Notes under the pieces: model-generated
What the model was told of the DNA's origin: nothing
The model's input: only the letters and a program-made list of their open reading frames with translations
Databases searched by the model: none
IMG/VR virus record: IMGVR_UViG_3300046513_000221
Span: 186,001 to 250,000 of that record
DNA length: 64,000 bases
Direction: 5' to 3' (one strand)
Shown here: positions 1 to 31,646 of the stretch, in pieces
How the letters are laid out: each line of letters starts with the position of its first letter
Numbering within the stretch: the stretch's first letter is position 1
Position numbers and translations under genes: made by a program

Positions 1-2
1 CT

Positions 3-329
3 GTGGTTCCCGGCAATCCGTATTACAACCCGACGATTCCGGGTACCTCGAACTACAATCCGACGATTCCGGGTACTGCGAACTACAACCCTGTGGTTCC
101 CGGCACCTCGAACTACAACCCTGTGGTTCCCGGCACCTCGAACTACAACCCTGTGTCTCCGGGCACTCCAGTCGGCAGCAACTCGGCCCTTGGTGTGTCG
201 TTCCCCGGTGGCGCTGGCGACTCGCTGGCTCCGGTGGTCGGTGATACGATCGTACGTGTAGCATACGCGGCGGTTGGTGTTCCCGTCAGTGTTCCATCCG
301 GTGGCTTCGTGACGGTGAAAGAGAAGTAA
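3..329 (+). CDS. Pro/Gly/Asn/Thr-repeat fibre-like protein, 3' part (5' end outside window); paralog of 419-1654
   Basis: 10-aa repeats YNP(T/V)(I/V)PGT(S/A)N; C-terminus LGVSFPGG...VSVPSGGFVTVKEK nearly identical to that of the next gene. Confidence 0.7.
   Translation: MVPGNPYYNPTIPGTSNYNPTIPGTANYNPVVPGTSNYNPVVPGTSNYNPVSPGTPVGSNSALGVSFPGGAGDSLAPVVGDTIVRVAYAAVGVPVSVPSGGFVTVKEK
81..155 (+). repeat. Exact 30-nt coding tandem repeat (2.5 copies) within a longer degenerate 30-nt array (about 20-160)
   Basis: aactacaaccctgtggttcccggcacctcg at 81-110 and 111-140, partial copy 141-155. Confidence 0.95.
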
Positions 330-349
330 CCGTAGAGAAGTAAAAAGTC

Positions 350-380
350 TCCCGAAGAGGTCTACACGATCTCTTCGGGA
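350..380. terminator. Hairpin, probable terminator
   Basis: TCCCGAAGAG (350-359) / CTCTTCGGGA (371-380), preceded by an A-rich tract. Confidence 0.6.
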
Positions 381-393
381 AACACATAAATAA
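381..393 (+). promoter_or_regulatory. Putative late promoter AACA-N6-TAA
   Basis: AACA CATAAA TAA, 26 nt upstream of ATG 419. Confidence 0.65.
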
Positions 394-418
394 CGATTAA
401 CCTTCCTCGGAATTTATT

Positions 419-1654
419 ATGGGCATGCTTCATAACAAACTTCGTCGGGAGCGCACCAATGCAGCCGTTAAAGTAGCAACGCAGACATTCAACGCTCCAG
501 GCGTGTACAAACCTCCTTTCGGAAAAGCCGTTCTGACCATTTCTGGTCGCGGTGCTTCTGGAAACCCCACGACCGGTGGCGGTATCGATGGCTATAATCC
601 CGATTCTCCCGGCACTGTCAGCGGCAGTAACCCTTTGGTACCCGGCACTGTCAGCGGCTATGGTACTCCAGTTACTGGTAATGCATCGTACAACCCGACA
701 ATCCCCGGCAATGTTTCTGGTACGAACCCTAGTACCGGTGGCAACTACGCCAACACGAACCCGACAATCCCCGGCAATGTCGCTGGCACGAACCCGACAA
801 CTGGCCACACGGTGAGCGGGTACAACCCGACAACTGGCGGTAACACCTCATACAACCCTGTAACTTCTGTTCCGGGTAATACCAACCCTACCACCTACAA
901 TCCTGCGTACACGAACCCGCCAACAACGGTTCCCGGCACCACGAACCCCGGCACGTACGTTGCAGCTTATACGAACCCCGGCTGGTGGGATGAGAGTCTA
1001 TTCTACAACAGCCAGCTCCAGTGTCCGTACGGCTGGACATTTGAAGGATATGAGGACACCGTGCCTACTTCGGTTCGCTGTTCTACTGTGCATCCGGGTA
1101 ACACGGTTCCGGCATCATTTACTCCGGGCAACACGAATTCTAGCACCACCACTCCGGGTAACGCAGTGCCATCGACGGCTGTCCCCGGCACCACGAACCC
1201 TACCACCTATACTCCGGGCAACGCGTACACTAACCCGACATCGGGTGGCAATCCGATCTACAATCCGACGATCCCCGGCAATCCGTACTACAACCCAACA
1301 ACCGGTGGCAATTCGAACTACAACGCTGTAATTCCGGGCAATTCGATCTACAACCCAACCACCGGTGGCAATGTCTTCTACAACCCACCTACTCCGGGTC
1401 CAGCACAGTACAACCCGACGATCCCATCGACGTCTAACTACAACCCGACGATCCCCGGTAATGCTAACTACGGTCCTATGACTCCGGGCAATGCGGCGGC
1501 TCCAACTGTTGTACTTGGCATCACCTTTCCCGGTGGAGCGGCCGACACGGTTGCTGGTGCTGTTGCAGACACGCAGGTTCGCCTCTCGTATTCGGAGATC
1601 GGCACACCGATCTCGGTGCCATCAGGTGGCTTCGTGACCATCAAGGAGAAATAG
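419..1654 (+). CDS. Pro/Gly/Asn/Thr-repeat fibre/adhesin-like virion protein with glycine-rich-domain-like termini
   Basis: N-terminal TQTFNAPGVY..PFG..LTISGRGASG; many 10-aa YNPTxPGN repeats; central unique Cys-containing loop; C-terminus shared with the upstream paralog. Confidence 0.65.
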   Translation: MGMLHNKLRRERTNAAVKVATQTFNAPGVYKPPFGKAVLTISGRGASGNPTTGGGIDGYNPDSPGTVSGSNPLVPGTVSGYGTPVTGNASYNPTIPGNVSGTNPSTGGNYANTNPTIPGNVAGTNPTTGHTVSGYNPTTGGNTSYNPVTSVPGNTNPTTYNPAYTNPPTTVPGTTNPGTYVAAYTNPGWWDESLFYNSQLQCPYGWTFEGYEDTVPTSVRCSTVHPGNTVPASFTPGNTNSSTTTPGNAVPSTAVPGTTNPTTYTPGNAYTNPTSGGNPIYNPTIPGNPYYNPTTGGNSNYNAVIPGNSIYNPTTGGNVFYNPPTPGPAQYNPTIPSTSNYNPTIPGNANYGPMTPGNAAAPTVVLGITFPGGAADTVAGAVADTQVRLSYSEIGTPISVPSGGFVTIKEK

Positions 1655-1684
1655 ACTGAGTGCGTTCCTCTAGGAATAGCATGG

Positions 1685-1716
1685 GCCTTCCCCGGTATCG
1701 GACGCTCGGGGAAGGC
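1685..1716. terminator. GC-rich hairpin
   Basis: GCCTTCCCCG / CGGGGAAGGC inverted repeat. Confidence 0.55.
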
Positions 1717-1790
1717 AACAGTGTATTTAGATAAAACTAGAATCGCGGTAATCCCGCCGCGATTCGTCGAACTTGAAAAGAGAAATCATC

Positions 1791-2381
1791 ATGCATTACC
1801 CAATTCCGCAGTTCATTCCTCCTACCGAGAACTTCCGTTTCTGGGAAGGTGGCTTCAGTCCCGAAGAGCTGGACCGCATCATCGAGATCGCGGAGCGATT
1901 CGACTTCACGCCGGGTTCGGTTGGCAACGGCATGATCAACGAAGAAGTTCGTGATTCCAAAATCACGTGGATCCATCTGGAGGAAGAGACTCGCTGGATC
2001 CACGATCGCCTTGCCGCGATCTCCTCGAAGATCAACTTCTACCACTTCGGTTTCGATCTGGACGTGGTTGACGGTCTGCAGTACACCAAATACAATTCGG
2101 ACAAGAAGCAGCACTACCGCTGGCACACCGACAACTATATCGGTCGCGAGGGCTACCAGCGCAAGCTGTCCTGCACGCTGATGCTGACCGAACCTGACCA
2201 GTACGAAGGCGGCGAGCTGCTGCTGAACACCAACGGCAATCAGGACCAGCCGGATTCCTTCAAGCCGAAGCGCGGCGACATCATCTTCTTCCGCTCGCAT
2301 CTGCCGCATCAGGTATCTCCTGTCACCGCTGGCGAGCGCGTAAGCCTCGTGACGTGGTTCCTCGGTCCACGTACTCGCTAA
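1791..2381 (+). CDS. 2OG-Fe(II) oxygenase (prolyl-hydroxylase/PKHD-like)
   Basis: HxD (WHTD), distal His (LPHQV), RxS (ERVS), RKLS and YEGGEL motifs; ATG 1791 preferred over TTG 1773. Confidence 0.9.
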   Translation: MHYPIPQFIPPTENFRFWEGGFSPEELDRIIEIAERFDFTPGSVGNGMINEEVRDSKITWIHLEEETRWIHDRLAAISSKINFYHFGFDLDVVDGLQYTKYNSDKKQHYRWHTDNYIGREGYQRKLSCTLMLTEPDQYEGGELLLNTNGNQDQPDSFKPKRGDIIFFRSHLPHQVSPVTAGERVSLVTWFLGPRTR

Positions 2382-2394
2382 GAAGGAGAGCAGT

Positions 2395-3162
2395 ATGATT
2401 CGCGAAATTATGGATCGTCTGGCCTTCATTGCGAAGCGCAACAAAGACGAAGACGCACCGATTATCGAGTTCCTGTGCGACCCGAACGACTGGGGCGTCC
2501 TCCCCGAACCCGTACCGGCGATCAAAATGATTCCGGACTGGTTCAAGAAGATCAAGCCGAATGCGCCCGACAGCGCCGGTCGCGACCAGTTCAACGGCAA
2601 GGTGATGACCGCCAAGAAGTGCATGCCACTGCTGGACGGCATGGCCGCTGGCTACATCATGCCACTATTCGGCGATCTGCATGTCACGACCAACGAGAAC
2701 AACCGCATCATCAAGCTGCATAACAACATGTACGGTCATGCTGGCGACCTGCACTCGTTGGACCAGCTGGGCGGCAAGACCAGCCCGACCTATCCGGGTC
2801 CGGCAGTGAAGTTCATCAACCGCTGGGTCATCAAGACCAAGCCGGGTTACTCGACATTGTTCATCCCACCGATGAACCACATCGAGAAGCGCTTCACCTG
2901 TCTGGCCGCGATCGTGGACACCGACACGTATCCGAAGAAGGTCAACTTCCCGGCTGTGTGGCACGCTGCCGACTACGACGGCTTCGTCGAGGCCGGTACG
3001 CCGCTGGTGACCGCCATCCCCGTCCGTCGCGCCGATCTGGCTAAGGCAGGTATCATCCGCAAGATGACTCCAGCCGAGATGGCCGAGGAACATCGCATCG
3101 AGAAGTGCCAGCATGCGCAGTTGCACTACTACACCGACCATCTGCGGGAACCTCGCAAATGA
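2395..3162 (+). CDS. Conserved phage protein with degenerate dUTPase-like beta fold; paralog of 3159-3917
   Basis: PDWFKK..KKCMPLLDGMAAGY, TKPGYSTL, IVDTDTY..VNFP, AGTPLVTAIP; RBS AAGGAG. Confidence 0.55.
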   Translation: MIREIMDRLAFIAKRNKDEDAPIIEFLCDPNDWGVLPEPVPAIKMIPDWFKKIKPNAPDSAGRDQFNGKVMTAKKCMPLLDGMAAGYIMPLFGDLHVTTNENNRIIKLHNNMYGHAGDLHSLDQLGGKTSPTYPGPAVKFINRWVIKTKPGYSTLFIPPMNHIEKRFTCLAAIVDTDTYPKKVNFPAVWHAADYDGFVEAGTPLVTAIPVRRADLAKAGIIRKMTPAEMAEEHRIEKCQHAQLHYYTDHLREPRK

Positions 3163-3917
3163 GTATCCTCGACAGCCTGAAGAAGCTGGCGAAGGGGCTG
3201 AAGAAGCCCCACATCCGCTTCAAGTGCCACACAGGTGGCTACTACACGTCGCAGCCGGTGGTACTGGCACGATCGATTCTTCCCTACTGGCTGAAGAAGC
3301 AGATTCAGGCCAAGGAAGTGAAGTTCGTCCGGTGTCCGGGGATGCATGACCTTGCACAGCAGGGTTACCTCATCGTCGCACATGCAGACATTCACATCAA
3401 GGCCAACCGTCAGGTGACGCTGGTCGATGTACACGGCATTCCGGACAGCCTGAAGCCGCAGCCTATGGGCTACGATGTCGTGGACGGGCTTGCCCCGATC
3501 CGTGGCAACGTCGCAAAGAAAGTCACGAAGATCCCACTTCCGTGGTGCATCTTCACCGCTCCGGGTTATTCGGCTCACGTTCTCCCGGCGGTAAAGCACT
3601 CCCCATTCCTCGACAAGCTGTTCGTGTACGGAGGCGAGGTTGACTACGAGGGCTTCCACGTAGTCAACTTCATCTTCACCGCGATGGAGGAATGCGAGTT
3701 CACGATCCCTGCAGGAACCCCGCTGCTTCAGGTAATCCCCTTCAAGCGCGAGGACTTCCATGCCGAGGTCGGGAAGGCAACCGAGCTGGAACACGACCAG
3801 CATCGCTTCGCCTTCACATCCCGTGTGGTAGGTGCGTACCGTCGCATGTACCATGTCAAGAAACTTTTCACTATCAGGAACCAAAATGAGCGTGCTTTTC
3901 CACGTAAACAAAGCTGA
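3159..3917 (+). CDS. Paralog of 2395-3162 (degenerate dUTPase-like fold)
   Basis: ATGA overlap with previous stop; PYWLKK..RCPGMHD..GY, TAPGYSA, EVDYEGF..VNF, AGTPLLQVIPFKR. Confidence 0.55.
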   Translation: MSILDSLKKLAKGLKKPHIRFKCHTGGYYTSQPVVLARSILPYWLKKQIQAKEVKFVRCPGMHDLAQQGYLIVAHADIHIKANRQVTLVDVHGIPDSLKPQPMGYDVVDGLAPIRGNVAKKVTKIPLPWCIFTAPGYSAHVLPAVKHSPFLDKLFVYGGEVDYEGFHVVNFIFTAMEECEFTIPAGTPLLQVIPFKREDFHAEVGKATELEHDQHRFAFTSRVVGAYRRMYHVKKLFTIRNQNERAFPRKQS

Positions 3918-4335
3918 CAAGACCGTCTTCTTCGCAGGTCGTCAGCCAGAGACTGTCGGTACCACTATCACCGGCTTCAAGGACATGCCTTACGCGGAGA
4001 TCATGGATCTCGGCTATCTGGGTCTGCCCAACGAGGGCTTCCTGACCGAACAGGACGCACTGACCGCTGGCATCCCGGCGTCGGAAGTCCAGCGCATGAA
4101 GGATCTGGCCTACGAACTGGAGTGGACTCGCTTCAGCGAGCAGCGCGAGACGCTGATCACCGCCGTCCGCTGGCGCACCGACCGCCACAACGACGAAATC
4201 GCTCTGGACCGCGAGCCGAGCGAGGACATCACCCCTGTCCTGAACTACATTCAGGCACTGCGTGACCTGACCACGGCCTTCACCGATCCGTTCGAGATCG
4301 TGTGGCCGCAGGTACCGGCACTGCCGACCGCGTAA
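3886..4335 (+). CDS. Tail fibre assembly chaperone
   Basis: C-terminal YIQALRDL...IVWPQVP signature of phage tail-fibre chaperones; ATG 3886 with AGGA RBS. Confidence 0.75.
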   Translation: MSVLFHVNKADKTVFFAGRQPETVGTTITGFKDMPYAEIMDLGYLGLPNEGFLTEQDALTAGIPASEVQRMKDLAYELEWTRFSEQRETLITAVRWRTDRHNDEIALDREPSEDITPVLNYIQALRDLTTAFTDPFEIVWPQVPALPTA

Positions 4336-4341
4336 TATGAT

Positions 4342-4380
4342 ACCCATTGGACGTTCATTCGTCCAATGGGTCTTCTTATT
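4342..4380 (+). terminator. Rho-independent terminator
   Basis: 12-bp stem ACCCATTGGACG / CGTCCAATGGGT followed by a T-rich tract. Confidence 0.8.
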
Positions 4381-4384
4381 TGCC

Positions 4385-4397
4385 AACAGGGAAATAG
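4385..4397 (+). promoter_or_regulatory. Putative late promoter AACA-N6-TAG
   Basis: AACA GGGAAA TAG upstream of ATG 4413. Confidence 0.65.
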
Positions 4398-4412
4398 AAT
4401 CCGCCCCAAACA

Positions 4413-4934
4413 ATGGAGGAAAAATTGGCTGATAAACAAGTGAAAATATTCGTAGTCTTTAACCATGACTACATTCTCGGTAAGCTCACAAAATTCTTCA
4501 CCGGCTGCTATGCATATCACGCCGGATTTGTGGTGTTGGAAAGCGATGCTATCTATGACATGGGATGGCTGTGGCGAAAGATCAAGTACAGCGGCAAGTA
4601 CACCGACAAGCAGATCGTACTGTTCGATTTACCGGAAGGTGTTATCTTGACCGAGCAGGATTTGCTGGATGAAGTGATCAAGGGTGTTGCTGAGTTCAGT
4701 AACAACCAATTCAGTAACAGCCTCTACGGCTTCATGGACTACGTCGGCTTCCTGCTGCGTCCGTTCTACCACCTCGTAGGCAAGCCAACCCGCAACTTCG
4801 GCGGTAAGATCTGCACCGAGAAGATGAATGATATCCTTGTGGCCCACGGCTGGAAGGATTCGCCGTTCAATGAGGAAGTGCCTAGCCCGTGTGACTACGT
4901 GCGAGCCTTCAACATAGCGGATCCAAGCAACTAA
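4413..4934 (+). CDS. Permuted papain-like (YiiX/YaeF-type NlpC/P60) hydrolase-like protein
   Basis: His before Cys: YHAGFV ... YGF ... ICTEK ... PSPCD. Confidence 0.5.
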   Translation: MEEKLADKQVKIFVVFNHDYILGKLTKFFTGCYAYHAGFVVLESDAIYDMGWLWRKIKYSGKYTDKQIVLFDLPEGVILTEQDLLDEVIKGVAEFSNNQFSNSLYGFMDYVGFLLRPFYHLVGKPTRNFGGKICTEKMNDILVAHGWKDSPFNEEVPSPCDYVRAFNIADPSN

Positions 4935-4943
4935 GGAATCAAA

Positions 4944-5183
4944 ATGTACTCAAACGTAAAAATGAAGATGAGCGATGTACCGGGAAAGGTTCCAACTCTG
5001 GAAGACCTTGACTTCGGTGAGATCGCTATCAACACTAGCGATGGATTGATGTTCTTCCGTCGTCGCGACGTCAATGGCGTCGATACAATCGTGATCGTCG
5101 GAGGTGCCAATCGTGGTGCTTCCGGCGACCTCAACACGACGAGCGACTCGATGGTCGCTCTGATCTACACCGGTTTGCAATAA
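4944..5183 (+). CDS. Stand-alone tail-fibre N-terminal attachment-like module
   Basis: SDVPGKVPTLEDLDFGEIAINTSDGLMF resembles the conserved N-terminus of many phage fibres (P....L..GE.A.NT.DG..F). Confidence 0.55.
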   Translation: MYSNVKMKMSDVPGKVPTLEDLDFGEIAINTSDGLMFFRRRDVNGVDTIVIVGGANRGASGDLNTTSDSMVALIYTGLQ

Positions 5184-5196
5184 GAAAGGAATCAAT

Positions 5197-6825
5197 ATGG
5201 CACTCCCAACCACTATCGGTCAGGCCCGTAACGGCAACTTGACCGCGATGAAGGCTCAGATCTTGCAGATCGATCCTACCACTGCCGGTCCTACCGAGCT
5301 GGTCAATCAGGCATCCCTGATGGCTCTGTACGGTCGTATTCAAGACTCCCTCTTCATCGATCTCGGTGACCCGACTTCGCTTGGCGATATCTCCAGTGGC
5401 GACTTGTCGTCCTTCCTGTCGAATATTAATAGCCTCGCAGACTTCAACGCACGCCTGAGCGACCAGACATGGTGCAACCTGCTGACCGGCAACGTCGGAG
5501 CTATGGCTACCGTATCCGGTTCCGTTACCGCTGTGACTGCATTGATCGCTGCACCAAAGGCTCTTACCGCCGCTTTAGCATCTAACGTCGCAATGACTGC
5601 GCTTATGGCTTCCAACGTATCCGTTTCGGTATTCGTTGGATCGTCGTCAGCTATGTCTTCGCTTGCAGCTTCGGTCACCGCATCGAACGCGATGGTAGCA
5701 TCGGTTACCATGATGAATGCTGTTGCAACTTCTGCGGTCTCCCGTACCGCGATCGGCAACGGTAGCGTCCAAAATGCTGGTTTCACGGCTATTGCCGCCT
5801 CTTCAATGGCTCTAGCTAAGTACGCCATTGGTCAAGCCGCTAATGCGTCCGGCGTTACCGATCCTTCGGCGTATGCCGATCTGACGGCTGTAACTGCATT
5901 GAGTTCGAGCCAGCATACGACATTCGCAACTAGCTATAGCGCTATCTACACCGTTCTCTCTAACTCGGCAGTTGGTATGGCCGCGTTGGTTGCATCGGTG
6001 GGCTTCATCACTTACGCCGGATCTCTGAGTGTTGCAAACAGCGTTAACAACGCTATGACTGCCTCGCAGTACAAAGTGGGTGCGTATCTGGACAAGATTC
6101 GCACTCAGATCGGCGGAGTGGGTAGCAACGCGAACCTCGCGGCTGCGAACACTGTAGCTCAGATCTCGGCGCTTGCGGCGGCTGATCTTACTGCCCTCTT
6201 CAGTGTAACTCAGGCTCGCCTGAACGTTCTGATCTCAGTCAGTGCGATGACAACTTTAGCAGCATCCGCTAACGCGATGGCAGTTCTGACCGCCAATTCT
6301 TCCTACATGACCACTGTGTGGAGTGTGGTTTCTGCAGCAACCATCATGTTCCAGAATACTGCTTCTCGCCAAGCAATGTGGACCAACGATCTGGCTTCGC
6401 TTGCTACTCTGCAAGCAAATCCAGCCACGGTCCAAGCTCTAATCAGTGCTAACGTATTCTCCAAGTTCATCTCGACCACTATCCCTCAGAAGATGACTGC
6501 CACGGGAGTCAAGACGATCCTGATCCGTCGATTCTACGGTACGAACGCAGGTGCGAGCGGTGATGAGTACGAATACATCAGCTACAAAAAGACTGGTGAT
6601 GGCGTAACCACAGGTGTGGGTAACGGGGTCTTCTCTCCGGATGGAACCCGTGGTCTCGCCCCCGGCAATTTAAGCACCGGTACTGTCGCCGGTGTTTATA
6701 CCAGTAATGGTGTTCGCCCCATTACTGACGATACCAGTGCAAATTTCGTCGCAGCGGCAAACGGTCTGGAACGTACTTCGTGGGCATACGGCCAGAACAT
6801 GACTGTCTACTACATCGCAGCATAA
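5197..6825 (+). CDS. Ala/Ser-rich helical-repeat tail fibre / receptor-binding protein candidate
   Basis: About 11-aa pseudo-repeats (ASxxAMxAL), beta-rich C-terminal tip, flanked by fibre chaperones; third-position GC visibly lower than core genes. Confidence 0.55.
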   Translation: MALPTTIGQARNGNLTAMKAQILQIDPTTAGPTELVNQASLMALYGRIQDSLFIDLGDPTSLGDISSGDLSSFLSNINSLADFNARLSDQTWCNLLTGNVGAMATVSGSVTAVTALIAAPKALTAALASNVAMTALMASNVSVSVFVGSSSAMSSLAASVTASNAMVASVTMMNAVATSAVSRTAIGNGSVQNAGFTAIAASSMALAKYAIGQAANASGVTDPSAYADLTAVTALSSSQHTTFATSYSAIYTVLSNSAVGMAALVASVGFITYAGSLSVANSVNNAMTASQYKVGAYLDKIRTQIGGVGSNANLAAANTVAQISALAAADLTALFSVTQARLNVLISVSAMTTLAASANAMAVLTANSSYMTTVWSVVSAATIMFQNTASRQAMWTNDLASLATLQANPATVQALISANVFSKFISTTIPQKMTATGVKTILIRRFYGTNAGASGDEYEYISYKKTGDGVTTGVGNGVFSPDGTRGLAPGNLSTGTVAGVYTSNGVRPITDDTSANFVAAANGLERTSWAYGQNMTVYYIAA

Positions 6826-6837
6826 CGAAAGAGAAAT

Positions 6838-7491
6838 ATGAAAATTGTAATCGACAAACTGACTAACAAAATCGTCGGTCTGACCTCCGCAGAGTTCGTT
6901 ACCGATGATCACAAGCTGATGGAATACCCTGCCAATTTCATCGAGTCCGAGCTGGATCTCTGGTACTTCGATGGTGAGAACTTGCTGCGTGACGCCAGTA
7001 AGGTACTGGTAATCGCCAAGGCGGAACGCAAGATCATCGTCAAGAAGGAAGCGGCGCAGCTGATTGCCGCCACTGACTGGAAGCTGTCGCGTGCCAAGGA
7101 ACGCCAGACTGCCGGGTGGGGATCCCTCGCCGAGATCGATGCGGTTCTGACCGAACGCGAGGCCATTCGTCGCTCCAGCGATATCGCAGAGCATGCCATC
7201 GATGCTCTGGAAACGGCATATCAGGCCGAGATGTTCCAGTGGAGTGTCACCGTCGCCGTCGCCGCCCCGAAGCGTCTGACCCACGTTGACTTCATGAAGC
7301 GCTTCTCCGACGACGAGATCGAGTCCGTTCTGGAAGCCGCCAAGACCAACGCGGCGTTGAACGCCTTCTGGGAGAAGTTCCGTCTGGCCGGTGACGTCAA
7401 CCTGCTGGATCCGATGACCATCGCCGGTGTTCAGGCTCTGGAGATCGCCACCATCCTGAATCCGGGACGTGCGGAAGAGATCCTCGCCTAA
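6838..7491 (+). CDS. Tail fibre assembly protein-like
   Basis: IAATDWK...R.AIR.S and C-terminal F..RFSDDE...VNLLDP.T.AGVQAL......GRAEEIL, typical of fibre-associated chaperones. Confidence 0.6.
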   Translation: MKIVIDKLTNKIVGLTSAEFVTDDHKLMEYPANFIESELDLWYFDGENLLRDASKVLVIAKAERKIIVKKEAAQLIAATDWKLSRAKERQTAGWGSLAEIDAVLTEREAIRRSSDIAEHAIDALETAYQAEMFQWSVTVAVAAPKRLTHVDFMKRFSDDEIESVLEAAKTNAALNAFWEKFRLAGDVNLLDPMTIAGVQALEIATILNPGRAEEILA

Positions 7492-7538
7492 AAAAAAAAG
7501 AACCCCTAGTGACCGTGAAGGCCACTAGGGGATTTCTT
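7491..7538. terminator. Bidirectional terminator
   Basis: A-run, CCCCTAGTG / CACTAGGGG stem, then ATTTCTTT, between convergent genes. Confidence 0.85.
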
Positions 7539-7843
7539 TAGACTGCTGCATGGTTCGCTGAGCTTGTCAGTTCGAGCTGACCAGTACGGCAGTCGAGGTT
7601 GAGGTGGCTCTTCGCCATCTTTCTCATGACTCCGGGTTCCGTGTAACCGGTCTCCCAGATGGAAAGCGAATCGTAGAATACAAACGAGTTCGTCACATGA
7701 ACCACACGAATCGAGAACCCGACAGGCTTTGCCACTCGGGTTCCCCTATCTGTGCGGATAGGATAAGGATTTATGTACTCTTCGGGGAGTGGAGCACTGT
7801 AGGTGTCTCCGATCCTCGGCTCCCTACATCCGCATGGTTGCAT
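7538..7843 (-). CDS. Hypothetical protein
   Basis: GGAGG RBS before ATG; ends at the terminator; no motif recognised. Confidence 0.45.
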   Translation of the reverse strand: MQPCGCREPRIGDTYSAPLPEEYINPYPIRTDRGTRVAKPVGFSIRVVHVTNSFVFYDSLSIWETGYTEPGVMRKMAKSHLNLDCRTGQLELTSSANHAAV

Positions 7844-7948
7844 GGCCCCTCCGTTCAGGGTTTCCGAGCAGCCAGCGACGAGTTAGCGACGTGGTTCACG
7901 CCAAAAATCATATACTTCCTGCTGGTTGTAGTTGAGAAATGGTCCAGA

Positions 7949-9136
7949 CTAGTCTGGCCTCGCTAGGATCAGTTTTCTCTCGGCACGCGTGACGGCTGTG
8001 TAAAGCCATTTACGGTGTACCTTTCGATCTCTAGTCAGATGTTCCTCGATGATGATAGGCTTGTCGTATGAGCTACCTTGACTCTTGTGGCAGGAGATCG
8101 CCTCGGAGAAGTCCACCTTCAGCAGTCCGTGACTCTTCAGGTAATGGCGCTCCTCGTTGGCGTTGTTGAACGCCATGGAACCATCGAAGTAGAGCTTAAG
8201 ATCGATCGCGTTCGGGTTGTCAGTGCTACTGCCAGTGATCGTCGAGATCGGGATGCCGTCCGGACGGATGCAGCGATGCATCAGGCCGACCGAGTCCTTC
8301 AGCGCGAAGGTGTTCTGGTCCTCAGCGCTGGTCATCACCATGCCGTTGAACAGACCACGCTCGTGATCGTTCGCCAGAACCATGACGCGCTCACCCTCGC
8401 CGGGGTAGTTCTTGAACTTGAAGCCCTTCAACTTGCGCATCAGCTTGTTGAAGTAGTGACGCGTCTCGTTCTTACCTGTGATGATCTGGTCTGTCATCAT
8501 CAACAGGTCATCCGTCAGCTCCTCCTCGCGCACCACCAGAACACCGGCACCATACCTGCCGTAGCTGATATTCTTACCTAGCCTGATGTCGTGAGCGAGT
8601 CGGATGATCGGACTGTCCTCCGCCTGACGGTGGATCTTGATCAGAGCGGACTCCGCGTTCTCCATGAACTCCGCATCGCCATCGTCGCCGATAGGAGGCA
8701 GCTGACCGGAGTCGCCGACGTACAGTACCGGGACGCCAAAGCTCTCGATGTCCTGACGCATCGCCTTGGAGACCATCGAGGCCTCATCGACGATGATCAG
8801 GCTGTACAGATCGGCCACTTGGCTCTTGGAGCGACGGTTGAAGACGTAGTCTCCGTTCGGCAATTCCTCGGCCTCGTAGCAGAGGCTGTGGATGGTACCA
8901 GCCTGTGGAACACCCTTCTTGCGTAGTTCGCCAGCGGCCTTGTGGGTGTATGCCACGACCGCGATCTGTTTGTTGGTTCGGAAGTCGTCACACGCGATGA
9001 GAAACTTCATCAGCGCCGTCTTCCCGGTACCGGCGTAGCCCTTCAGCCTCCATGTAGGCTTGAGCTTGTCCGTGTACCACGTTCGTATCTCGAACAGAGC
9101 AATCTCTTGCTCCTGAGTTAAAACGATATCTGCCAT
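7949..9136 (-). CDS. SF1B ATP-dependent DNA helicase (Dda/RecD2-like)
   Basis: Walker A GYAGTGKT, TIHS, IIVDEASMV, GDSGQLPP, IHRQ, CHKSQGSSY, LYTAVTRA. Confidence 0.95.
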   Translation of the reverse strand: MADIVLTQEQEIALFEIRTWYTDKLKPTWRLKGYAGTGKTALMKFLIACDDFRTNKQIAVVAYTHKAAGELRKKGVPQAGTIHSLCYEAEELPNGDYVFNRRSKSQVADLYSLIIVDEASMVSKAMRQDIESFGVPVLYVGDSGQLPPIGDDGDAEFMENAESALIKIHRQAEDSPIIRLAHDIRLGKNISYGRYGAGVLVVREEELTDDLLMMTDQIITGKNETRHYFNKLMRKLKGFKFKNYPGEGERVMVLANDHERGLFNGMVMTSAEDQNTFALKDSVGLMHRCIRPDGIPISTITGSSTDNPNAIDLKLYFDGSMAFNNANEERHYLKSHGLLKVDFSEAISCHKSQGSSYDKPIIIEEHLTRDRKVHRKWLYTAVTRAERKLILARPD

Positions 9137-17053: not shown

Positions 17054-17434
17054 ATGAGTAAACGTAAACAGAGTAAGCAAGATAAAGAAGCCTTGGAGTT
17101 GGAGCGCAAGCTCGGCGGTCTCTTGGGCTGGGTTAACATCGAGCAATCATTGGCAGTTGATGGTACCGTCATCTTCACGGGGATTGCACCGAAGAGCAGT
17201 AAGGTCAGCGTCCTCCCGCAATGGGTACGCGACTGGCGCGACTGCGGTCCTCTGCTGACTCAGGTCAGTATGATCGCGATCTACATCGACAAGGACGCCG
17301 ACGAGATCGAGTGTCATGTCAATTCTCCAAACATGTCGAAGTACAATGACTTGGCACTGCGCATGGGGATCGTCGAATCCTTTATTGACGACATCGAAGA
17401 ACAGAAAGAAGAAGAACCTGTATGCTCCAGCTAA
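17054..17434 (+). CDS. Phage ABA-sandwich-like protein
   Basis: LGW...PQWVRDWRDCGPLL motif; ATG 17054 after GAGGG. Confidence 0.45.
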   Translation: MSKRKQSKQDKEALELERKLGGLLGWVNIEQSLAVDGTVIFTGIAPKSSKVSVLPQWVRDWRDCGPLLTQVSMIAIYIDKDADEIECHVNSPNMSKYNDLALRMGIVESFIDDIEEQKEEEPVCSS

Positions 17435-18780
17435 AACCACGTAACATCGACGATGCATTCGTCGAAGCAAATCTGATCACCAATCACGAGCCACTGAGCA
17501 GCGATGCCAAGTTCACCCTCGACGGCGTCTTCTCCGAGAAGATCTTCGGCACGATGGCGAACGGCATCGACTACTCCTGCACCTGCGGGTGCTATCAAGG
17601 CGAGTTCAACAAGGGCTACGAGTGCGAGATCTGCAACGACCCTGTCGTGTTCAAGGGTCTGGCGCTGAAGAAGGAAGGCTGGATCGATCTGGAGTACCCG
17701 ATCATCCACCCGGTCTTCTACCGCTACCTGAAGAAGATCATCGGTGCGACCAATCTGCAGTCGATCATCAACTACAAGGGCAAGATCAAAGTGTCCGGCC
17801 AGCTGGACGAGGCTCCGCTGGAGTACCCGTTCCACGAGATCGGCATGATGCGTTTCATCGAGAACTTCGAGACCATCGTGGACAGCTACATCAGCCAGAA
17901 GTCCGAGAAGGCCGTCAAGCACGCCAAGGATATCGCCTTCATCGTCGAGCATCAGGAGCTTGTGTTCATCACCAAGTACCCGATCATCAACAGCCGCCTC
18001 CGTCCGGCGACCATCCTGAACGGCGAGTTCAGCTTCGACGCGATCAACAACCTGTACAACGGCATCATCCGTGGCTCCGGTCTGCTGCGCGATCTGACCG
18101 AGATCGAGAAGAACGACATGAACATCCTGTCTCTGGTCTACAAGAACCAGATGCTGGTGAACGAGTTGTTCGATACCGTCATCGACACGCTGTCCAACAA
18201 GGACGGCTACATCCGTGGCTCCCTGATGGGATGCCGCCTGAACTGGTCGAGCCGCAACGTCATCACGCCGCTGACCGGCAAGTACGGTATGGACCAGTGC
18301 GTCATGCCTTACCTGACCGCGATCGAGCTGCTGAAGCCGCTGATCATGCGCAAGCTGCAGAAGCTGAAGAAGATCAGCATCGCGGCGGCGCACAAGATCT
18401 GGTTCGAGGCCAATCTGGTCTACAACAAGCTCGTGCACAGCATCATGCGCGAGCTGGTGAAAGAAAACAACATCCGGATCCTGCTGAACCGTAATCCGAC
18501 GATCTCGGTAGGCTCTATCCTGATGCTGGAGGTAGCCGATATCAAGGAGGACATGGAAGACGTCACCTTGAGCATCTCCAACCTGATCCTGCCGTCCATC
18601 TCCGGCGACTACGACGGAGACGTTCTGAACATCGTCATGCTGTTCTCCAAGGCGTTCGTCGATCTGTTCCGTCCATTCATGCCGAGCAACCTCGTCATCG
18701 ACACCGACAGCGGCGAGTTCAACGGCAATTTCGCACCGTTCAAGGACGTGGCTATCGGCCTCCAGTCCATCGTGAACTAG
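17422..18780 (+). CDS. rpoC: Non-virion RNA polymerase beta' subunit, N-terminal part (catalytic)
   Basis: DGVFSEKIFG, Zn-binding CTCG...CEIC, G.L.G.R..WS.R.VITP, RNPT, catalytic GDYDGD. Confidence 0.93.
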   Translation: MLQLKPRNIDDAFVEANLITNHEPLSSDAKFTLDGVFSEKIFGTMANGIDYSCTCGCYQGEFNKGYECEICNDPVVFKGLALKKEGWIDLEYPIIHPVFYRYLKKIIGATNLQSIINYKGKIKVSGQLDEAPLEYPFHEIGMMRFIENFETIVDSYISQKSEKAVKHAKDIAFIVEHQELVFITKYPIINSRLRPATILNGEFSFDAINNLYNGIIRGSGLLRDLTEIEKNDMNILSLVYKNQMLVNELFDTVIDTLSNKDGYIRGSLMGCRLNWSSRNVITPLTGKYGMDQCVMPYLTAIELLKPLIMRKLQKLKKISIAAAHKIWFEANLVYNKLVHSIMRELVKENNIRILLNRNPTISVGSILMLEVADIKEDMEDVTLSISNLILPSISGDYDGDVLNIVMLFSKAFVDLFRPFMPSNLVIDTDSGEFNGNFAPFKDVAIGLQSIVN

Positions 18781-29579: not shown

Positions 29580-31646
29580 TTACTCTTCGTCGCCGCGTTC
29601 ATCCTGCAGCGTTTCGAGGGCTTCTTCCTCCATCCCCTCGTTCTCCATCGTGATACCGATACCAGAGAAGTACGAGCGAATCACCTGTGCGGCATTCGTG
29701 ATCGTGTTCTCGGTGTCGGTGCCGATGTTGACGCGGTTGATGTTCTGGATGTCGTTGCGCAGCAGCTTGACGATCTGGTTCCGGCGCTCCACGTTGTGCG
29801 AGGAGTAGTGACGCAGGAAGTTCACGATCGGCTTGGAACCTTCTGGGCCGTTGGACAGCATCAGCATGTTGAACGTCTCCTGCTCGCCGAAGCGGATCGG
29901 AGACGAGTTGTTCATCGCGGTACCCTTCTTGTACTGCTCGTTGCTCTTGAACGGAACGTTGAGCAGACTGATCTGACCAGCCGAGCGAACGGAGAACTTC
30001 GACGCGGCCTCGTGCTTCAGCTGAATGAAGTACATGTCGCCGAGGATCTGCGCCTGAAGCAAGCCCTCGAATTTGAGCTTGTTGATGCCGAAGTGGTTAT
30101 ACAGGTTCGACATGATCTGCGGCGTGGCGTTCTCGAAGAAGGGAGGCTGATGGATGTACAGACCCTTCTCGAAGACGGCCTCGCAGTAAGCGTCGATGAA
30201 CTCGTCGGAGTCCGGCTGCGTATCGGCGAACTCCAGCAGCTCGGTACGCTGCAGCGGGTTCAGGATCTCGAAGAACTCCAGAATCGCGTTGAAGAGCCAG
30301 TAATTGCGCTCCAATACCACGCTCTTCGCCTTGAGGATGATCTCGTTGGCGATGAAGTTCAGCTCCTGCTCGAACAGCTGTGCGATGTTCATACGCCCGG
30401 TGACGCCGAGCGGATTCAGCACCACATCCGGGATGCGACCGTCTGCCGTGCGCGGCATCTGGTCATCCGGGATGATGGCGGAGATAACGCCCTTGTTGCC
30501 GTAGCGACCGGTGATCTTCGAACCGATGTAGATGCCGTGGTCCTTGCGGATTTTGAAGCGCAGCACAGCACCCTCGAACTCGGAGCGATCCTGACTGAAC
30601 TTGATGCCCGAGTTGTAGTCCTTGGCCTTCTGGAACAGGAAGCCGACATCGTCGCGCAGGGTCCAGCCGTTCTCTTTGAACTGAGTGATCATGTCCTCCA
30701 GTTCCTGATACTTGGCCTTGTTGTGCTCGATCAGGACGCGGATCGGCTCGTTGAAGGTGTAAGCCAGATCCTTCTCAGCGAAGTTGCTGAAGACCTCGAT
30801 GTCCTCGATGACGCCGTCGAAGAAGAAGCAGGTGTCGGTGCGCTCGATGGTCGCGCCGTTCTCCTTGAAGTCGTTCAGGATCGAACTGTAGTTGATCCGG
30901 CGACGGGCCGCGAGGATGCCGCCCTTGATCTTCTGACCGACCGTCGGGAACGGCTGGTGACGACCCTTGTCGCCGTACAGGTTCAGCAGAACGTCGTTGT
31001 TGTTGACGACGATGTCGGCTTCGGTCACGGAGGTGTGACTGAACTTTTTAGCACCCGACGCACTGAGTGGGATGCCGTCTTCGAAGGTCAGACCGTCTTT
31101 CGCGAGAAACAGCACGTTCAGGTTGACGCCGTACTTCAGATTCAGGCCGTCGTCGTACATGTTGGTGCGCTCCAGCAGCGTTCCGGCCTCCAGAGTATCC
31201 CCGAACTCCATCTCGGGCATTTTCCGTACGTTTTTGTGCCCATAGTTCTCGGTCAGGCGCGACACGGAGGTGTGGTGGAAGACGCCCACGGACTCGTCGC
31301 CGTACAGGAAGAAGTGGTACGCGTTGTTCTCGTTGAACTCCACGGTGCCAATGAAGGTGGCGTCCTCGGTCAACTGGGTGTAGCCCATGCCGTGCGAGTA
31401 CTTACCGACCTGATTCTCGAAGCGGCTGAAGACCTTCGGGATCTCTCCCTCGTTCAGCGTCAGTGCCTGACCGATCTGGCCGGTGAACATGTTCAGGCGC
31501 GAGCCATCACATTTGTTGACGTTTGGAGTGAGGACGTCCTCACCCAAGAAGTAATGGGGTGGTCTTTCCGTCACCACCTCGACGGCCTTAGCGGTTGCGG
31601 TCTTCTTGATGACCTTGGCTGCTTCGGTTGGTTTCTTCTTTGCCAT
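29580..31646 (-). CDS. rpoB: Non-virion RNA polymerase beta subunit, C-terminal part
   Basis: SR..MF, FEDGI, GILAARR, IGSKITGRYGNKGVIS, LNPLGV.GRMN, YF.QLKH, PIRFGEQE. Confidence 0.93.
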   Translation of the reverse strand: MAKKKPTEAAKVIKKTATAKAVEVVTERPPHYFLGEDVLTPNVNKCDGSRLNMFTGQIGQALTLNEGEIPKVFSRFENQVGKYSHGMGYTQLTEDATFIGTVEFNENNAYHFFLYGDESVGVFHHTSVSRLTENYGHKNVRKMPEMEFGDTLEAGTLLERTNMYDDGLNLKYGVNLNVLFLAKDGLTFEDGIPLSASGAKKFSHTSVTEADIVVNNNDVLLNLYGDKGRHQPFPTVGQKIKGGILAARRRINYSSILNDFKENGATIERTDTCFFFDGVIEDIEVFSNFAEKDLAYTFNEPIRVLIEHNKAKYQELEDMITQFKENGWTLRDDVGFLFQKAKDYNSGIKFSQDRSEFEGAVLRFKIRKDHGIYIGSKITGRYGNKGVISAIIPDDQMPRTADGRIPDVVLNPLGVTGRMNIAQLFEQELNFIANEIILKAKSVVLERNYWLFNAILEFFEILNPLQRTELLEFADTQPDSDEFIDAYCEAVFEKGLYIHQPPFFENATPQIMSNLYNHFGINKLKFEGLLQAQILGDMYFIQLKHEAASKFSVRSAGQISLLNVPFKSNEQYKKGTAMNNSSPIRFGEQETFNMLMLSNGPEGSKPIVNFLRHYSSHNVERRNQIVKLLRNDIQNINRVNIGTDTENTITNAAQVIRSYFSGIGITMENEGMEEEALETLQDERGDEE

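What the first reader, a model, noticed from the sequence alone, without database searches (positions are those of the whole stretch)
419..4335. Possible fibre post-translational modification cassette (proline hydroxylase beside Pro-rich fibres)
Seen: a 2OG-Fe(II) oxygenase with intact HxD...H/RxS residues follows the Pro-rich repeat genes and precedes two paralogs and a fibre chaperone, with the block closed by the terminator at 4342. Established: chlorovirus PBCV-1 encodes a prolyl 4-hydroxylase that acts on Pro-rich repeats. Inference: this phage hydroxylates its own fibre prolines for stability or later glycosylation, a poorly documented phage PTM system.
Basis: partly seen in the sequence, partly recalled or inferred. 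Interest (0 to 1): 0.62.

Follow-up and report, generated by a model that had tools for sequence, protein, structure and literature searches.

The report
Phage tail-fibre hydroxylation cassette
A soil jumbo phage, and hundreds of uncultured phages, keep a prolyl-hydroxylase-like enzyme and two unknown partner proteins fixed beside their proline/asparagine/tyrosine-rich tail-fibre tip proteins, which points to a chemical maturation system for phage fibres that has not been described.

Summary
Window 419-4335 (+ strand) holds a 411-aa Pro/Asn/Tyr/Gly-rich repeat protein (last of four tandem paralogs), a 196-aa 2OG-Fe(II) oxygenase with intact HxD...H...RxS, two paralogous DUF6065 proteins, a tail-fibre assembly chaperone and a terminator.

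The neighbourhood is not chance. In 78 of 78 related loci with enough upstream DNA, a member of the same repeat-protein family lies upstream of the same oxygenase-DUF6065 block. It usually sits directly behind a tail fibre with a module-specific C-terminal domain. 561 IMG/VR contigs encode DUF6065 relatives; no cultured phage in the collection does at comparable similarity.

A profile of the oxygenase finds only PiuC-type and prolyl hydroxylases among solved structures at E<1e-4 (PBCV-1 P4H 8e-11). In about half of the loci a PF11397 glycosyltransferase follows. By my recollection this is the family of the Skp1 hydroxyproline GlcNAc-transferase. Some loci add a sulfotransferase.

A fibre-protein modification cassette is therefore well supported. 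The modified residue (proline most likely) and the chemistry are unproven, and this phage has no glycosyltransferase of that family.

The two "paralogs" have a dUTPase-like fold without its phosphate-binding motifs. Their role is unknown, and they are the newest part.

The parts
3..329 (+). C-terminal 108 aa of repeat-protein paralog 3. The gene starts upstream of the window, at genome 185136.
   Evidence: same C-terminal domain (..VSVPSGGFVTVKEK) and NYNPxxPG repeats. A 30-nt tandem period is seen.
419..1654 (+). Repeat-protein paralog 4 (411 aa). It has a conserved N-terminal ~50 aa, two arms of Pro/Asn/Tyr/Gly/Thr-rich ~10-aa repeats around a non-repeat middle piece with two Cys, and a conserved C-terminal ~55 aa. 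Putative fibre-tip adhesin and putative substrate.
   Evidence: In the AF2 model of a short homologue the N- and C-terminal parts are both confident and span one jelly-roll-like match; the repeats are unmodelled.
1684..1765 (.). Two intergenic hairpins without T-tails, between the repeat gene and the oxygenase gene. Possibly transcript attenuation or stabilisation (inference).
1791..2381 (+). 2OG-Fe(II) oxygenase of the prolyl-hydroxylase-like (2OG-FeII_Oxy_3 / PKHD) type, 196 aa, with a complete metal and 2OG-binding set.
2395..3162 (+). DUF6065-type protein A (255 aa), with a dUTPase-like beta-barrel fold.
   Evidence: phrog_7084 at 1.8e-51. 317 homologues in the word search, most carrying PF19541. 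AF2 mean pLDDT 93.6. VIA Z 10.9 and Foldseek 6.5e-4 to dUTPases.
3159..3917 (+). DUF6065-type protein B (252 aa), a paralog of A. Its start overlaps the stop of A.
   Evidence: phrog_7084 at 9e-24. Present after A in 65 of 68 non-redundant loci. Natural A-B type tandem fusions exist.
3886..4335 (+). Tail-fibre assembly chaperone (149 aa from the ATG at 3886).
   Evidence: Phage_tail_APC 30.3 bits against a cut-off of 26.6. Matches PHROGs tail-fibre assembly families. Start chosen by homology to L003.
4342..4371 (+). Intrinsic-terminator-like hairpin (12-bp stem, T-rich tail) that closes the block.

Best explanation
The block is the enzyme half of a conserved tail-fibre tip module.

Its full order is: a tail fibre with a module-specific C-terminal domain; one to four hypervariable repeat proteins; a prolyl-hydroxylase-like 2OG oxygenase; DUF6065-A; DUF6065-B; then either a fibre assembly chaperone (as here) or a PF11397 glycosyltransferase.

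The repeat protein appears to be a jelly-roll knob built from its own N- and C-terminal ends. From the knob a long excursion of Pro/Asn/Tyr-rich repeats runs out to a variable, often two-cysteine, tip piece and back (inferred from the model and the sequences).

Inferred mechanism: in the infected cell the oxygenase uses Fe(II), O2 and 2-oxoglutarate to hydroxylate residues of the repeat arms, most probably prolines in NP and x-P-G contexts. This would stiffen polyproline-type segments and create hydroxyl handles. In sister phages these handles would be glycosylated and sulfated. The chaperone then helps the fibre piece to assemble. The two dUTPase-fold proteins act with the oxygenase, either as its substrate-holding subunits or as a further transferase.

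Shown: gene content, catalytic residues, folds and synteny. Inferred: the substrate, the residue, the order of steps and the DUF6065 role.
For: Synteny:
- The oxygenase is next to DUF6065 in 68 of 68 non-redundant loci.
- A repeat-protein family member lies upstream in 78 of 83 loci, and the other five are cut at a contig end.
- A fibre with the conserved C-terminal domain lies directly upstream of the first repeat gene in 59 loci and in this genome. Its N-terminus matches annotated tail fibres of cultured phages.
- The module occurs in a related jumbo phage, in 15-270-kb viral contigs and in a podovirus-like prophage of Undibacterium.

Enzyme class:
- Pfam 2OG-FeII_Oxy_3 at 2e-20.
- Invariant H112, D114, H173 and R183.
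- Profile against solved structures: PiuC 5e-15, PBCV-1 P4H 8e-11, PPHD 1.5e-9, Chlamydomonas P4H 2e-9, Bacillus anthracis P4H 2e-7, and P3H1.

Companion enzymes in sister loci:
- PF11397 'Glycosyltransferase (GlcNAc)' at 2e-30 to 3e-34, present in 45 of 83 loci. Gnt1, which I recall as the founding member of this family, takes hydroxylated Skp1 as substrate (PMC3515798).
- Sulfotransfer_2 in nine loci.
- The closest oxygenase in a cultured phage (S-SCSM1) is followed by a protein O-fucosyltransferase.
- A more distant module pairs DUF6065 and two 2OG-FeII_Oxy_3 genes with a G-N-P collagen-like repeat protein.

Substrate features:
- Every full-length family member keeps prolines in its core.
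- Gly is the commonest residue after Pro, at 27%.
- The enzymes are 40-68% identical across loci while the repeat proteins are hypervariable.
Against: - No chemical evidence exists: no mass spectrometry and no RNA data.
- The nearest solved relatives, PiuC/YbiX, have no known substrate (and my own knowledge).
- Proline content falls to 3.9% in some family members, where Asn (26%) and Tyr (12%) dominate. In those the x-P-G context is absent.
- The window genome has no glycosyltransferase of the PF11397 family and no sulfotransferase.
- The repeat arms could not be modelled (pLDDT below 50), so the structural rationale is conjecture.
- The complex prediction for the oxygenase with the two DUF6065 proteins gave no verdict.
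Confidence: 0.55

Rival explanations
1. Same cassette and same substrate protein, but the oxygenase hydroxylates another residue of the repeats (asparagine, tyrosine, threonine or a side-chain carbon elsewhere). Alternatively it makes a cross-link rather than 4-hydroxyproline.
For: - YN is the commonest dipeptide of the repeat cores (1412 occurrences, in 65 of 67 proteins). Asn is the commonest residue, at 16.4%.
- Some members have only 16-21 prolines in about 500 aa.
- The nearest solved relatives (PiuC) have no assigned substrate.
- There is a weak NCBIfam match to a cyclophane-forming peptide oxygenase, YhhC, at E 0.085.
Against: - Every characterised enzyme the profile finds at E<1e-4 is a prolyl hydroxylase.
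- YN is almost absent in L048/L051, which have 31% Pro, while Pro is never absent.
- The PF11397 partner family is known for hydroxyproline and Ser/Thr acceptors (my own knowledge).
Confidence: 0.2
2. The oxygenase and the dUTPase-fold proteins act on nucleotides, DNA or a host molecule, for example base hypermodification in a phage that may carry unusual DNA, or host takeover. On this view they merely travel with the fibre genes.
For: - DUF6065 has a dUTPase / dCTP-deaminase-like fold.
- It keeps a VDTDxY motif that aligns with dUTPase motif III.
- The genome is related to phiR1-37 and AR9/PBS1 and lacks a canonical dUTPase.
- PHROGs files such oxygenases as auxiliary metabolic genes.
Against: - The block sits between the repeat gene and a fibre chaperone or glycosyltransferase in all 78 informative loci, which come from unrelated phage types. 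Pure hitch-hiking would not give this.
- In the only alignment obtained, the Arg/Ser of dUTPase motifs II and IV are replaced, and the region after motif IV is helical rather than a Gly-rich arm.
- TET/JBP-type matches are marginal, at E 0.29-0.39.
- Most module-bearing contigs are ordinary 15-90-kb phages.
Confidence: 0.1
3. The DUF6065 pair, and perhaps the oxygenase, are non-catalytic assembly or structural parts of the fibre. They would be scaffolds or chaperones for a trimeric tip, and nothing is covalently modified.
For: - The dUTPase fold is classically trimeric, like fibres (my own knowledge).
- The dUTPase catalytic phosphate-binding motifs are missing.
- A chaperone gene follows in this subfamily.
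- Natural tandem DUF6065 fusions suggest a fixed hetero-oligomer.
Against: - The oxygenase keeps every metal and 2OG ligand invariant in 32 diverse sequences. That is not expected for a purely structural protein.
- DUF6065 keeps conserved polar residues, including Cys, His and Asp.
- Glycosyl- and sulfotransferases join the block in sister loci.
Confidence: 0.1

Closest known systems
PBCV-1 (chlorovirus) prolyl 4-hydroxylase acting on viral Pro-rich repeats (PDB 5c5t; Eriksson et al. 1999, as cited in PMC9301287)
   Same: A small virus-encoded 2OG-FeII_Oxy_3 enzyme, found by the profile at 8e-11. The virus also encodes Pro-rich repeat proteins.
   Different: - Its host is a eukaryotic alga.
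- Its substrates are (PAPK)n-type, Lys-containing repeats (my own knowledge), whereas the cores here have almost no charged residues.
- It has no DUF6065 partners and no fixed synteny with a fibre gene.
- The window enzyme is closer to PiuC (5e-15).
Skp1 modification pathway of Dictyostelium and Toxoplasma (PhyA prolyl 4-hydroxylase, then Gnt1 GlcNAc-transferase; PMC3515798)
   Same: A cytoplasmic P4H-type oxygenase is coupled to a PF11397-family glycosyltransferase. In 45 of 83 sister loci such a gene follows the block.
   Different: - The pathway modifies one proline of one regulatory protein, not long repeat arrays of a structural protein.
- It is eukaryotic.
- The window phage itself lacks the transferase.
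- The acceptor of the phage transferases is untested.
PiuC / YbiX PKHD-type hydroxylases of Proteobacteria (PDB 9qn0, 9ghl, 3dkq)
   Same: The best sequence relatives among solved structures. They have the same length class and the same HxD...H...RxS set.
   Different: - The NCBIfam equivalog scores are far below cut-off (76 bits against 143).
- Those genes sit beside TonB-dependent iron receptors, not beside fibre genes.
- Their substrate is unknown.
gp38-type adhesins at the tip of T2/S16 long tail fibres (glycine-rich polyglycine-II sandwich with hypervariable loops; my own knowledge)
   Same: A separate small gene after the fibre gene. A low-complexity Gly/Pro-rich repeat scaffold carries a hypervariable receptor-binding piece, and a chaperone gene is nearby.
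   Different: - No sequence similarity was found.
- The fold of the repeats here is unknown.
- gp38 has no modifying enzymes.
Trimeric dUTPases and dCTP deaminases
   Same: The core beta-barrel fold of DUF6065-A matches: VIA Z 10.2-10.9 over 116-130 residues, with 22 family members at Z>6 and then a drop. An Asp-containing motif aligns with dUTPase motif III.
   Different: - The Arg/Ser of motifs II and IV are not seen in the alignment, and there is no glycine-rich C-terminal arm.
- DUF6065-A is 100 residues longer, with extra helices.
- No sequence-level match to any solved chain.
- It always accompanies a protein oxygenase.
Collagen-like fibre proteins with C1q/TNF-like knobs (Bacillus BclA, C1q) and mimivirus collagen hydroxylase/glycosyltransferase L230 (my own knowledge)
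   Same: A repetitive stalk plus a jelly-roll knob. Weak fold matches to C1q/TNF domains and the BclA C-terminal domain, at Z 4.5-5.6. Hydroxylation and glycosylation of the stalk is the known logic.
   Different: - There is no Gly-X-Y periodicity in the window proteins.
- The knob is made from both ends of the chain, with the repeats inserted.
- Z values are below 6, so the fold assignment is only suggestive.

Membership tests
2OG-Fe(II) oxygenase, prolyl-hydroxylase-like (Pfam 2OG-FeII_Oxy_3) | Family profile match above the curated cut-off | tested here: met
   74 bits against a cut-off of 27, E 2e-20.
2OG-Fe(II) oxygenase, prolyl-hydroxylase-like (Pfam 2OG-FeII_Oxy_3) | HxD...H iron triad and a basic residue (RxS) for the 2OG C5 carboxylate | tested here: met
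   H112, D114, H173 and R183 are invariant in 32 homologues. S185 is present in the window protein.
Protein prolyl 4-hydroxylase (collagen/viral/PHD type) | Sequence relationship to enzymes with proven prolyl hydroxylase activity | tested here: met
   Profile against the PDB: 5c5t 7.6e-11, 4iw3 1.5e-9, 2jig 1.9e-9, 5hv0 1.9e-7, 8k0e 4.7e-5. PiuC-type proteins of unknown substrate score better, at 5e-15.
Protein prolyl 4-hydroxylase (collagen/viral/PHD type) | Hydroxylation of peptidyl proline demonstrated | not testable with these tools
   This needs mass spectrometry or an enzyme assay.
PiuC/YbiX PKHD-type hydroxylase (NCBIfam PRK05467 equivalogs) | Score above the equivalog cut-off | tested here: not met
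   Best score 76.2 bits against a cut-off of 143 (NF003974). The other models are lower still.
DUF6065 (Pfam PF19541) / phrog_7084 | Family profile match | tested here: inconclusive
   The window's protein A scores 22.4 bits, below the Pfam cut-off of 26.6. However, phrog_7084 matches at 1.8e-51 (A) and 9e-24 (B), and homologues 50-68% identical carry PF19541.
Trimeric dUTPase | dUTPase beta-barrel fold | tested here: met
   VIA Z 10.9, with 130 of 134 residues aligned (7pwx). Foldseek 6.5e-4 (8y1q). Model pLDDT 93.6.
Trimeric dUTPase | Five catalytic motifs, including phosphate-binding Arg/Ser (II, IV) and the Gly-rich C-terminal arm (V) | tested here: not met
   hhalign against E. coli Dut aligns VDTDxY with IDSDY (motif III). 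PRSG corresponds to PPMNH and GERIAQ to GTPLVT. The C-terminus is helical. The alignment has low probability (6.8%), so this row is provisional. Pfam dUTPase finds nothing in the whole genome.
Phage tail-fibre assembly chaperone (Pfam Phage_tail_APC) | Family profile match above cut-off, and position after fibre genes | tested here: met
   30.3 bits against a cut-off of 26.6. Matches PHROGs tail-fibre assembly families. It is the last gene of the fibre block.
Collagen-like protein | Uninterrupted Gly-X-Y triplets | tested here: not met
   The repeats have a 10-aa period (NYNPxxPGNx), not a triplet period. There is no Pfam Collagen match. A distant sister module (L099) does have G-N-P triplets.
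Extensin / plant hydroxyproline-rich glycoprotein | Family profile match | tested here: not met
   Extensin_1 scores 14.5 bits against a cut-off of 105. Pro-rich scores 13.6 against 30.
Conserved phage module 'fibre C-domain - repeat protein - oxygenase - DUF6065 x2' (defined here) | All parts present, in order, on one strand | tested here: met
   In this genome: fibre at genome 181326-182615, four repeat genes at genome 182740-187654, then window 1791-4335. The same order holds in L003, L005 and the IMG/VR loci.

The most novel reading that the evidence does not exclude
Many uncultured phages of soil, fresh water and sea run a dedicated, oxygen-dependent maturation pathway for their receptor-binding fibre tips.

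In this reading, a prolyl-hydroxylase-like oxygenase works together with a new enzyme family of dUTPase fold (DUF6065). That family would have been recruited from nucleotide chemistry to protein modification, for example by using a uridine nucleotide or UDP-sugar on the new hydroxyl groups. The pathway is optionally extended by GT60-type glycosylation and by sulfation. The products would be hydroxylated, glycosylated adhesin arms comparable to plant or animal hydroxyproline-rich glycoproteins. Infectivity would depend on O2, iron and 2-oxoglutarate in the host.
Probability: 0.3. Interest if true: 0.9.

Novelty: new variant of a known kind. Interest (0 to 1): 0.74.

Why it matters
Covalent modification of bacteriophage structural proteins is barely documented. 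Prolyl hydroxylation with later glycosylation is regarded as a eukaryotic and giant-virus trait.

Here a fixed gene module, seen in hundreds of viral contigs but in no cultured phage, couples such an enzyme to hypervariable fibre-tip proteins. If confirmed, it would have several consequences:
- It would add a new layer to host recognition, because modified adhesins would be invisible to sequence-based host-range prediction.
- It would tie adsorption competence to oxygen, iron and 2-oxoglutarate supply in the host.
- It would give DUF6065 (more than 3000 cluster representatives) its first functional context.
- It would reveal a non-nucleotide use of the dUTPase fold.
- It would offer compact bacterial tools for making hydroxylated or glycosylated repeat proteins.

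A cultured handle exists: the Undibacterium sp. Rencai35W prophage.

Tried and rejected
- DNA megablast of window 1-8000 against cultured phages: no match.
- tblastn of the repeat protein against cultured phages: no match.
- DUF6065 single sequence and profile against solved-structure sequences: nothing meaningful.
- Repeat-protein profile against solved structures: nothing.
- The PF11397-type transferase against solved structures: nothing.
- Literature searches found no paper describing this module. 'DUF6065': 0 papers. PiuC with 2-oxoglutarate and hydroxylase: 0. Gnt1/Skp1/hydroxyproline/phage: 0. GT60 with bacteriophage: 3 irrelevant papers.
- Complex prediction (DUF6065-A, DUF6065-B, oxygenase as partner): no verdict, score 0.00. 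This is not evidence either way.
- ESM Atlas searches by features and by shape returned only other DUF6065 clusters.
- Pfam scans of flanking genes in fused-DUF6065 contexts and in haloviruses: nothing informative.
- The genome-contig scan gave only 8 loci, mostly proviruses. Distant DUF6065 copies in haloarchaea, Loktanella and Phycisphaerales lack the oxygenase.
- I first suspected DUF6065 to be a cupin-type or a second 2OG-type oxygenase. This was rejected by the fold search, where cupins reach only Z of about 3.
- I considered a collagen or extensin identity for the repeats. This was rejected.
- I considered a chance neighbourhood. This was rejected by synteny.
- No RNA runs hold the region, so expression could not be checked.

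Full report
**1. What is there**

The window is bases 186001-250000 of a single 263,413-bp viral contig with direct terminal repeats and 55% G+C. The DNA occurs in three rhizosphere metagenome runs.

On the + strand, window 419-4335 holds these features:
- 419-1654: a 411-aa repeat protein.
- 1791-2381: a 2OG-Fe(II) oxygenase.
- 2395-3162 and 3159-3917: two paralogous proteins.
- 3886-4335: a tail-fibre assembly chaperone.
- 4342-4371: a terminator-like hairpin with a 12-bp stem and a T-rich tail.

Window 3-329 is the end of an earlier copy of the repeat gene. The genome carries four tandem copies, at genome 182740-187654. They share the first ~50 and last ~55 residues. They differ in the repeats and, most of all, in a short non-repeat middle piece that has two cysteines in three of the four copies.

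The repeats have a 30-nt period, NYNPxxPGNx.

- Oxygenase: 2OG-FeII_Oxy_3 at 2e-20.
- The two paralogs: phrog_7084 at 1.8e-51 and 9e-24.
- Chaperone: Phage_tail_APC above the Pfam cut-off.
- H112-x-D114, H173 and R183-x-S185 are intact, and the His, Asp, His and Arg are invariant in 32 homologues.

**2. The neighbourhood is a conserved module**

The word-index search with paralog A found 317 relatives. A profile read against 1.84 billion representatives found 3347 at E<=0.001.

The contexts of two relatives showed the same gene order. One is a 155-kb viral contig. The other is a podovirus-like prophage of Undibacterium, with SU10-type adaptors. In both, the order is repeat protein, oxygenase, DUF6065-A, DUF6065-B and a small chaperone-like protein.

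A scan of IMG/VR found 561 contigs encoding relatives. I analysed the best 80, together with three loci fetched earlier:
- The oxygenase lies directly upstream of DUF6065-A in 80 of 83 loci. The three exceptions start at a contig end. That is 68 of 68 non-redundant loci with upstream sequence.
- DUF6065-B follows in 65 of those 68.
- HMMs built from the conserved N- and C-terminal parts of the repeat proteins find a family member upstream of the oxygenase in 78 of 83 loci. The other five are cut by the contig end. Seventeen non-redundant loci have two copies by a composition filter.
- In 59 loci the gene directly before the first repeat gene (gap -36 to +23 nt) ends in a conserved ~65-aa C-terminal domain. 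That gene ranges from 124 to 1558 aa. The same is true in this genome, at genome 181326-182615.
- The N-terminus of such a protein matches annotated tail fibres of many cultured phages. Its C-terminal domain does not.

The module is therefore part of the tail-fibre apparatus. No cultured phage in the 50,697-record collection carries a close DUF6065 homologue. Only haloarchaeal viruses and a few cyanophages match, at 23-35% identity.

**3. The oxygenase**

The single sequence matches only PKHD-type hydroxylases among solved structures.

The 32-sequence profile gives this ranking:
- PiuC at 5e-15.
- The PBCV-1 prolyl 4-hydroxylase at 8e-11.
- Pseudomonas PPHD at 1.5e-9.
- Chlamydomonas P4H at 2e-9.
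- Bacillus anthracis P4H at 2e-7.
- Human P4H-alpha and P3H1.
- Nucleic-acid oxygenases of the TET type appear only at E 0.29-0.39.

NCBIfam equivalog models for PiuC/YbiX are missed by a wide margin. The enzyme is thus a separate clade of the prolyl-hydroxylase-like branch. The substrate of its nearest solved relatives is not known.

**4. The repeat proteins**

Across 67 non-redundant members, the cores have the following composition:
- Asn 16%, Pro 14%, Thr 12%, Tyr 11%, Ala 11% and Gly 11%.
- Almost no charged residues.
- The commonest dipeptides are YN, NP, PG and GN.
- The commonest residue after Pro is Gly, at 27%.

Pro is present in every full-length member, at 3.9-31.5% with a median of 13.6%. 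The YN dipeptide nearly vanishes in the most Pro-rich members. The PG dipeptide vanishes in the most Asn-rich ones.

An AlphaFold model of a 213-aa member is confident for residues about 18-50 and 150-213 (block means 82-96). The repeats score below 50. Structural matches span both confident parts as one jelly-roll-like unit. The best match is the cyanophage Pam3 fibre at Z 5.9, followed by C1q/TNF-type knobs at Z about 5. These are weak scores and only suggestive.

My reading, which is an inference, is a knob formed by both chain ends. The repeats would run out to the variable middle piece and back. This suits a receptor-binding tip that diversifies by paralogy.

**5. The two paralogs**

The model of DUF6065-A has a mean pLDDT of 93.6. 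Its core is a dUTPase / dCTP-deaminase-like barrel:
- VIA Z is 10.2-10.9 over 116-130 residues. All 22 top entries are from that superfamily, followed by a drop to Z 5 and 3.6.
- Foldseek gives 6.5e-4.

A profile-to-sequence alignment with E. coli Dut places VDTDxY on motif III (IDSDY). It shows no counterpart of the phosphate-binding Arg/Ser of motifs II and IV. The C-terminus is helical rather than a glycine-rich arm. That alignment has low probability, so the motif statement is provisional.

Both paralogs keep a C-P-x-x-D element, a histidine and the first Asp of the motif.

Natural 450-500-aa proteins are tandem DUF6065-DUF6065 fusions. This suggests that A and B work as one unit. A complex prediction gave no verdict.

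What these proteins do is open. My ideas are:
- substrate-holding subunits of the small oxygenase;
- a transferase that uses a uridine nucleotide or UDP-sugar;
- a Cys-His-Asp enzyme acting on Asn.

**6. Companion enzymes in sister loci**

- In 45 of 83 loci (37 of 72 non-redundant) a PF11397 'Glycosyltransferase (GlcNAc)' gene lies directly after DUF6065-B, or just before the repeat genes. The matches are at 2e-30 to 3e-34.
- By my own knowledge this Pfam family was founded on Gnt1. Gnt1 takes prolyl-hydroxylated Skp1 as its substrate (PMC3515798).
- The transferase and the chaperone are nearly mutually exclusive at that position: 37, 24, 1 with both and 12 with neither.
- Nine loci add one or two Sulfotransfer_2 genes.
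- The closest oxygenase in a cultured phage, S-SCSM1 gp112 at 34.5% identity, is followed by a protein O-fucosyltransferase.
- A more distant module (L099) pairs DUF6065 and two 2OG-FeII_Oxy_3 genes with a protein of the same N/C architecture whose repeats are G-N-P triplets, and with a collagen-like protein.

These companions all point to protein hydroxylation followed by decoration. The window genome itself has neither the transferase nor a sulfotransferase.

**7. Verdict**

- The target residue and the chemistry remain inferences.
- Glycosylation does not follow for this particular phage.
- The module as a whole appears undescribed in the searched literature. It consists of the fibre C-domain, the hypervariable repeat adhesins, the P4H-like oxygenase and a pair of dUTPase-fold proteins.
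- I rate it a new variant of a known kind of system, namely hydroxylation and glycosylation of Pro-rich structural proteins. It has one component whose role is new.

**8. Limits**

- All functional statements rest on sequence, predicted folds and gene order.
- The 80 loci are the best-scoring of 561, not a random sample.
- Several loci are near-duplicates, so I give non-redundant counts where it matters.
- The Gnt1 origin of PF11397, the dU-DNA of phiR1-37/PBS1, the identity of 5c5t as the PBCV-1 enzyme, and gp38 adhesin structure come from my own knowledge, not from a tool.

Noticed in passing
window 17422-18780 (+), 29580-31646 (-), 37804-39288 (-), 53734-55044 (+), 46803-49304 (+): There are split multisubunit RNA polymerase genes and a virion protein most like those of Yersinia phiR1-37 and Bacillus AR9/PBS1 jumbo phages. 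The whole genome has no canonical dUTPase. Those relatives carry deoxyuridine DNA (my own knowledge), so this phage may too.
   Followed up: partly
window 40350-42050 (-): A phage-encoded GroEL-like chaperonin (phrog_5725, 1.9e-77).
   Followed up: no
window 348-380, 1684-1715, 1740-1765: Stable hairpins without T-tails lie between successive repeat genes and between the last repeat gene and the oxygenase gene. They may set different expression levels for the structural and the enzyme genes.
   Followed up: no
window 4944-5183 and 5197-6825: A 79-aa ORF matches tail-fibre N-termini (phrog_17885, 2.9e-9). It is followed 14 nt later, in another frame, by a 542-aa Ala/Ser/Thr-rich ORF with no family. 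This could be a split fibre gene, a frameshift or two genes.
   Followed up: no
genome 181326-182615 (just upstream of the window); L003 6500-7669 and 11994-12974; L005 5706-6788: Tail fibres of very different lengths share a ~65-aa C-terminal domain (..PPR..D.W.F.T.DGG.TW.GSL..). It is found only with this module, directly before the repeat genes in 59 loci. It may be the docking site for the repeat protein's knob.
   Followed up: partly
L024 5658-6365; L047 1860-2552; L079 5708-6358 and 9349-10221; L044 3088-4044; L079 8436-9437: Sister modules carry Sulfotransfer_2 genes between the repeat gene and the oxygenase, and PF11397 glycosyltransferases after DUF6065-B. Further conserved unknown genes lie beside them, for example L054 4900-5655 and L044 4060-4470.
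   Followed up: partly
L097 5333-7440; L098 5701-7203; proteins P0138, P0142, P0168, P0224, P0248: DUF6065 occurs as tandem fusions of 450-500 aa. In L097 a third, weakly matching (E 0.076) copy lies in front, which would give three domains, like a dUTPase trimer. In L098 it lies next to an HTTM-domain protein. No oxygenase is nearby in these contexts.
   Followed up: partly
L002 (Synechococcus phage Syn9) 5926-6714; L001 (Halorubrum tailed phage 5) 6926-7768: Syn9 gp43 is a distant DUF6065 relative. It sits beside two putative tryptophan halogenases, in the region that also holds an annotated 2OG-Fe(II) oxygenase gene. In haloarchaeal HF1/HRTV-type viruses a lone copy sits next to the baseplate and fibre genes.
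   Followed up: no
L099 3544-10584: A SU10-like phage contig has a Gly/Asn-rich G-N-P triplet protein, DUF6065, a Coq4-like gene, two 2OG-FeII_Oxy_3 genes and a collagen-like protein in one block. This is a collagen-flavoured variant of the module.
   Followed up: partly
window 4413-4934: A 173-aa ORF right after the terminator has no match in Pfam, PHROGs or NCBIfam.
   Followed up: no
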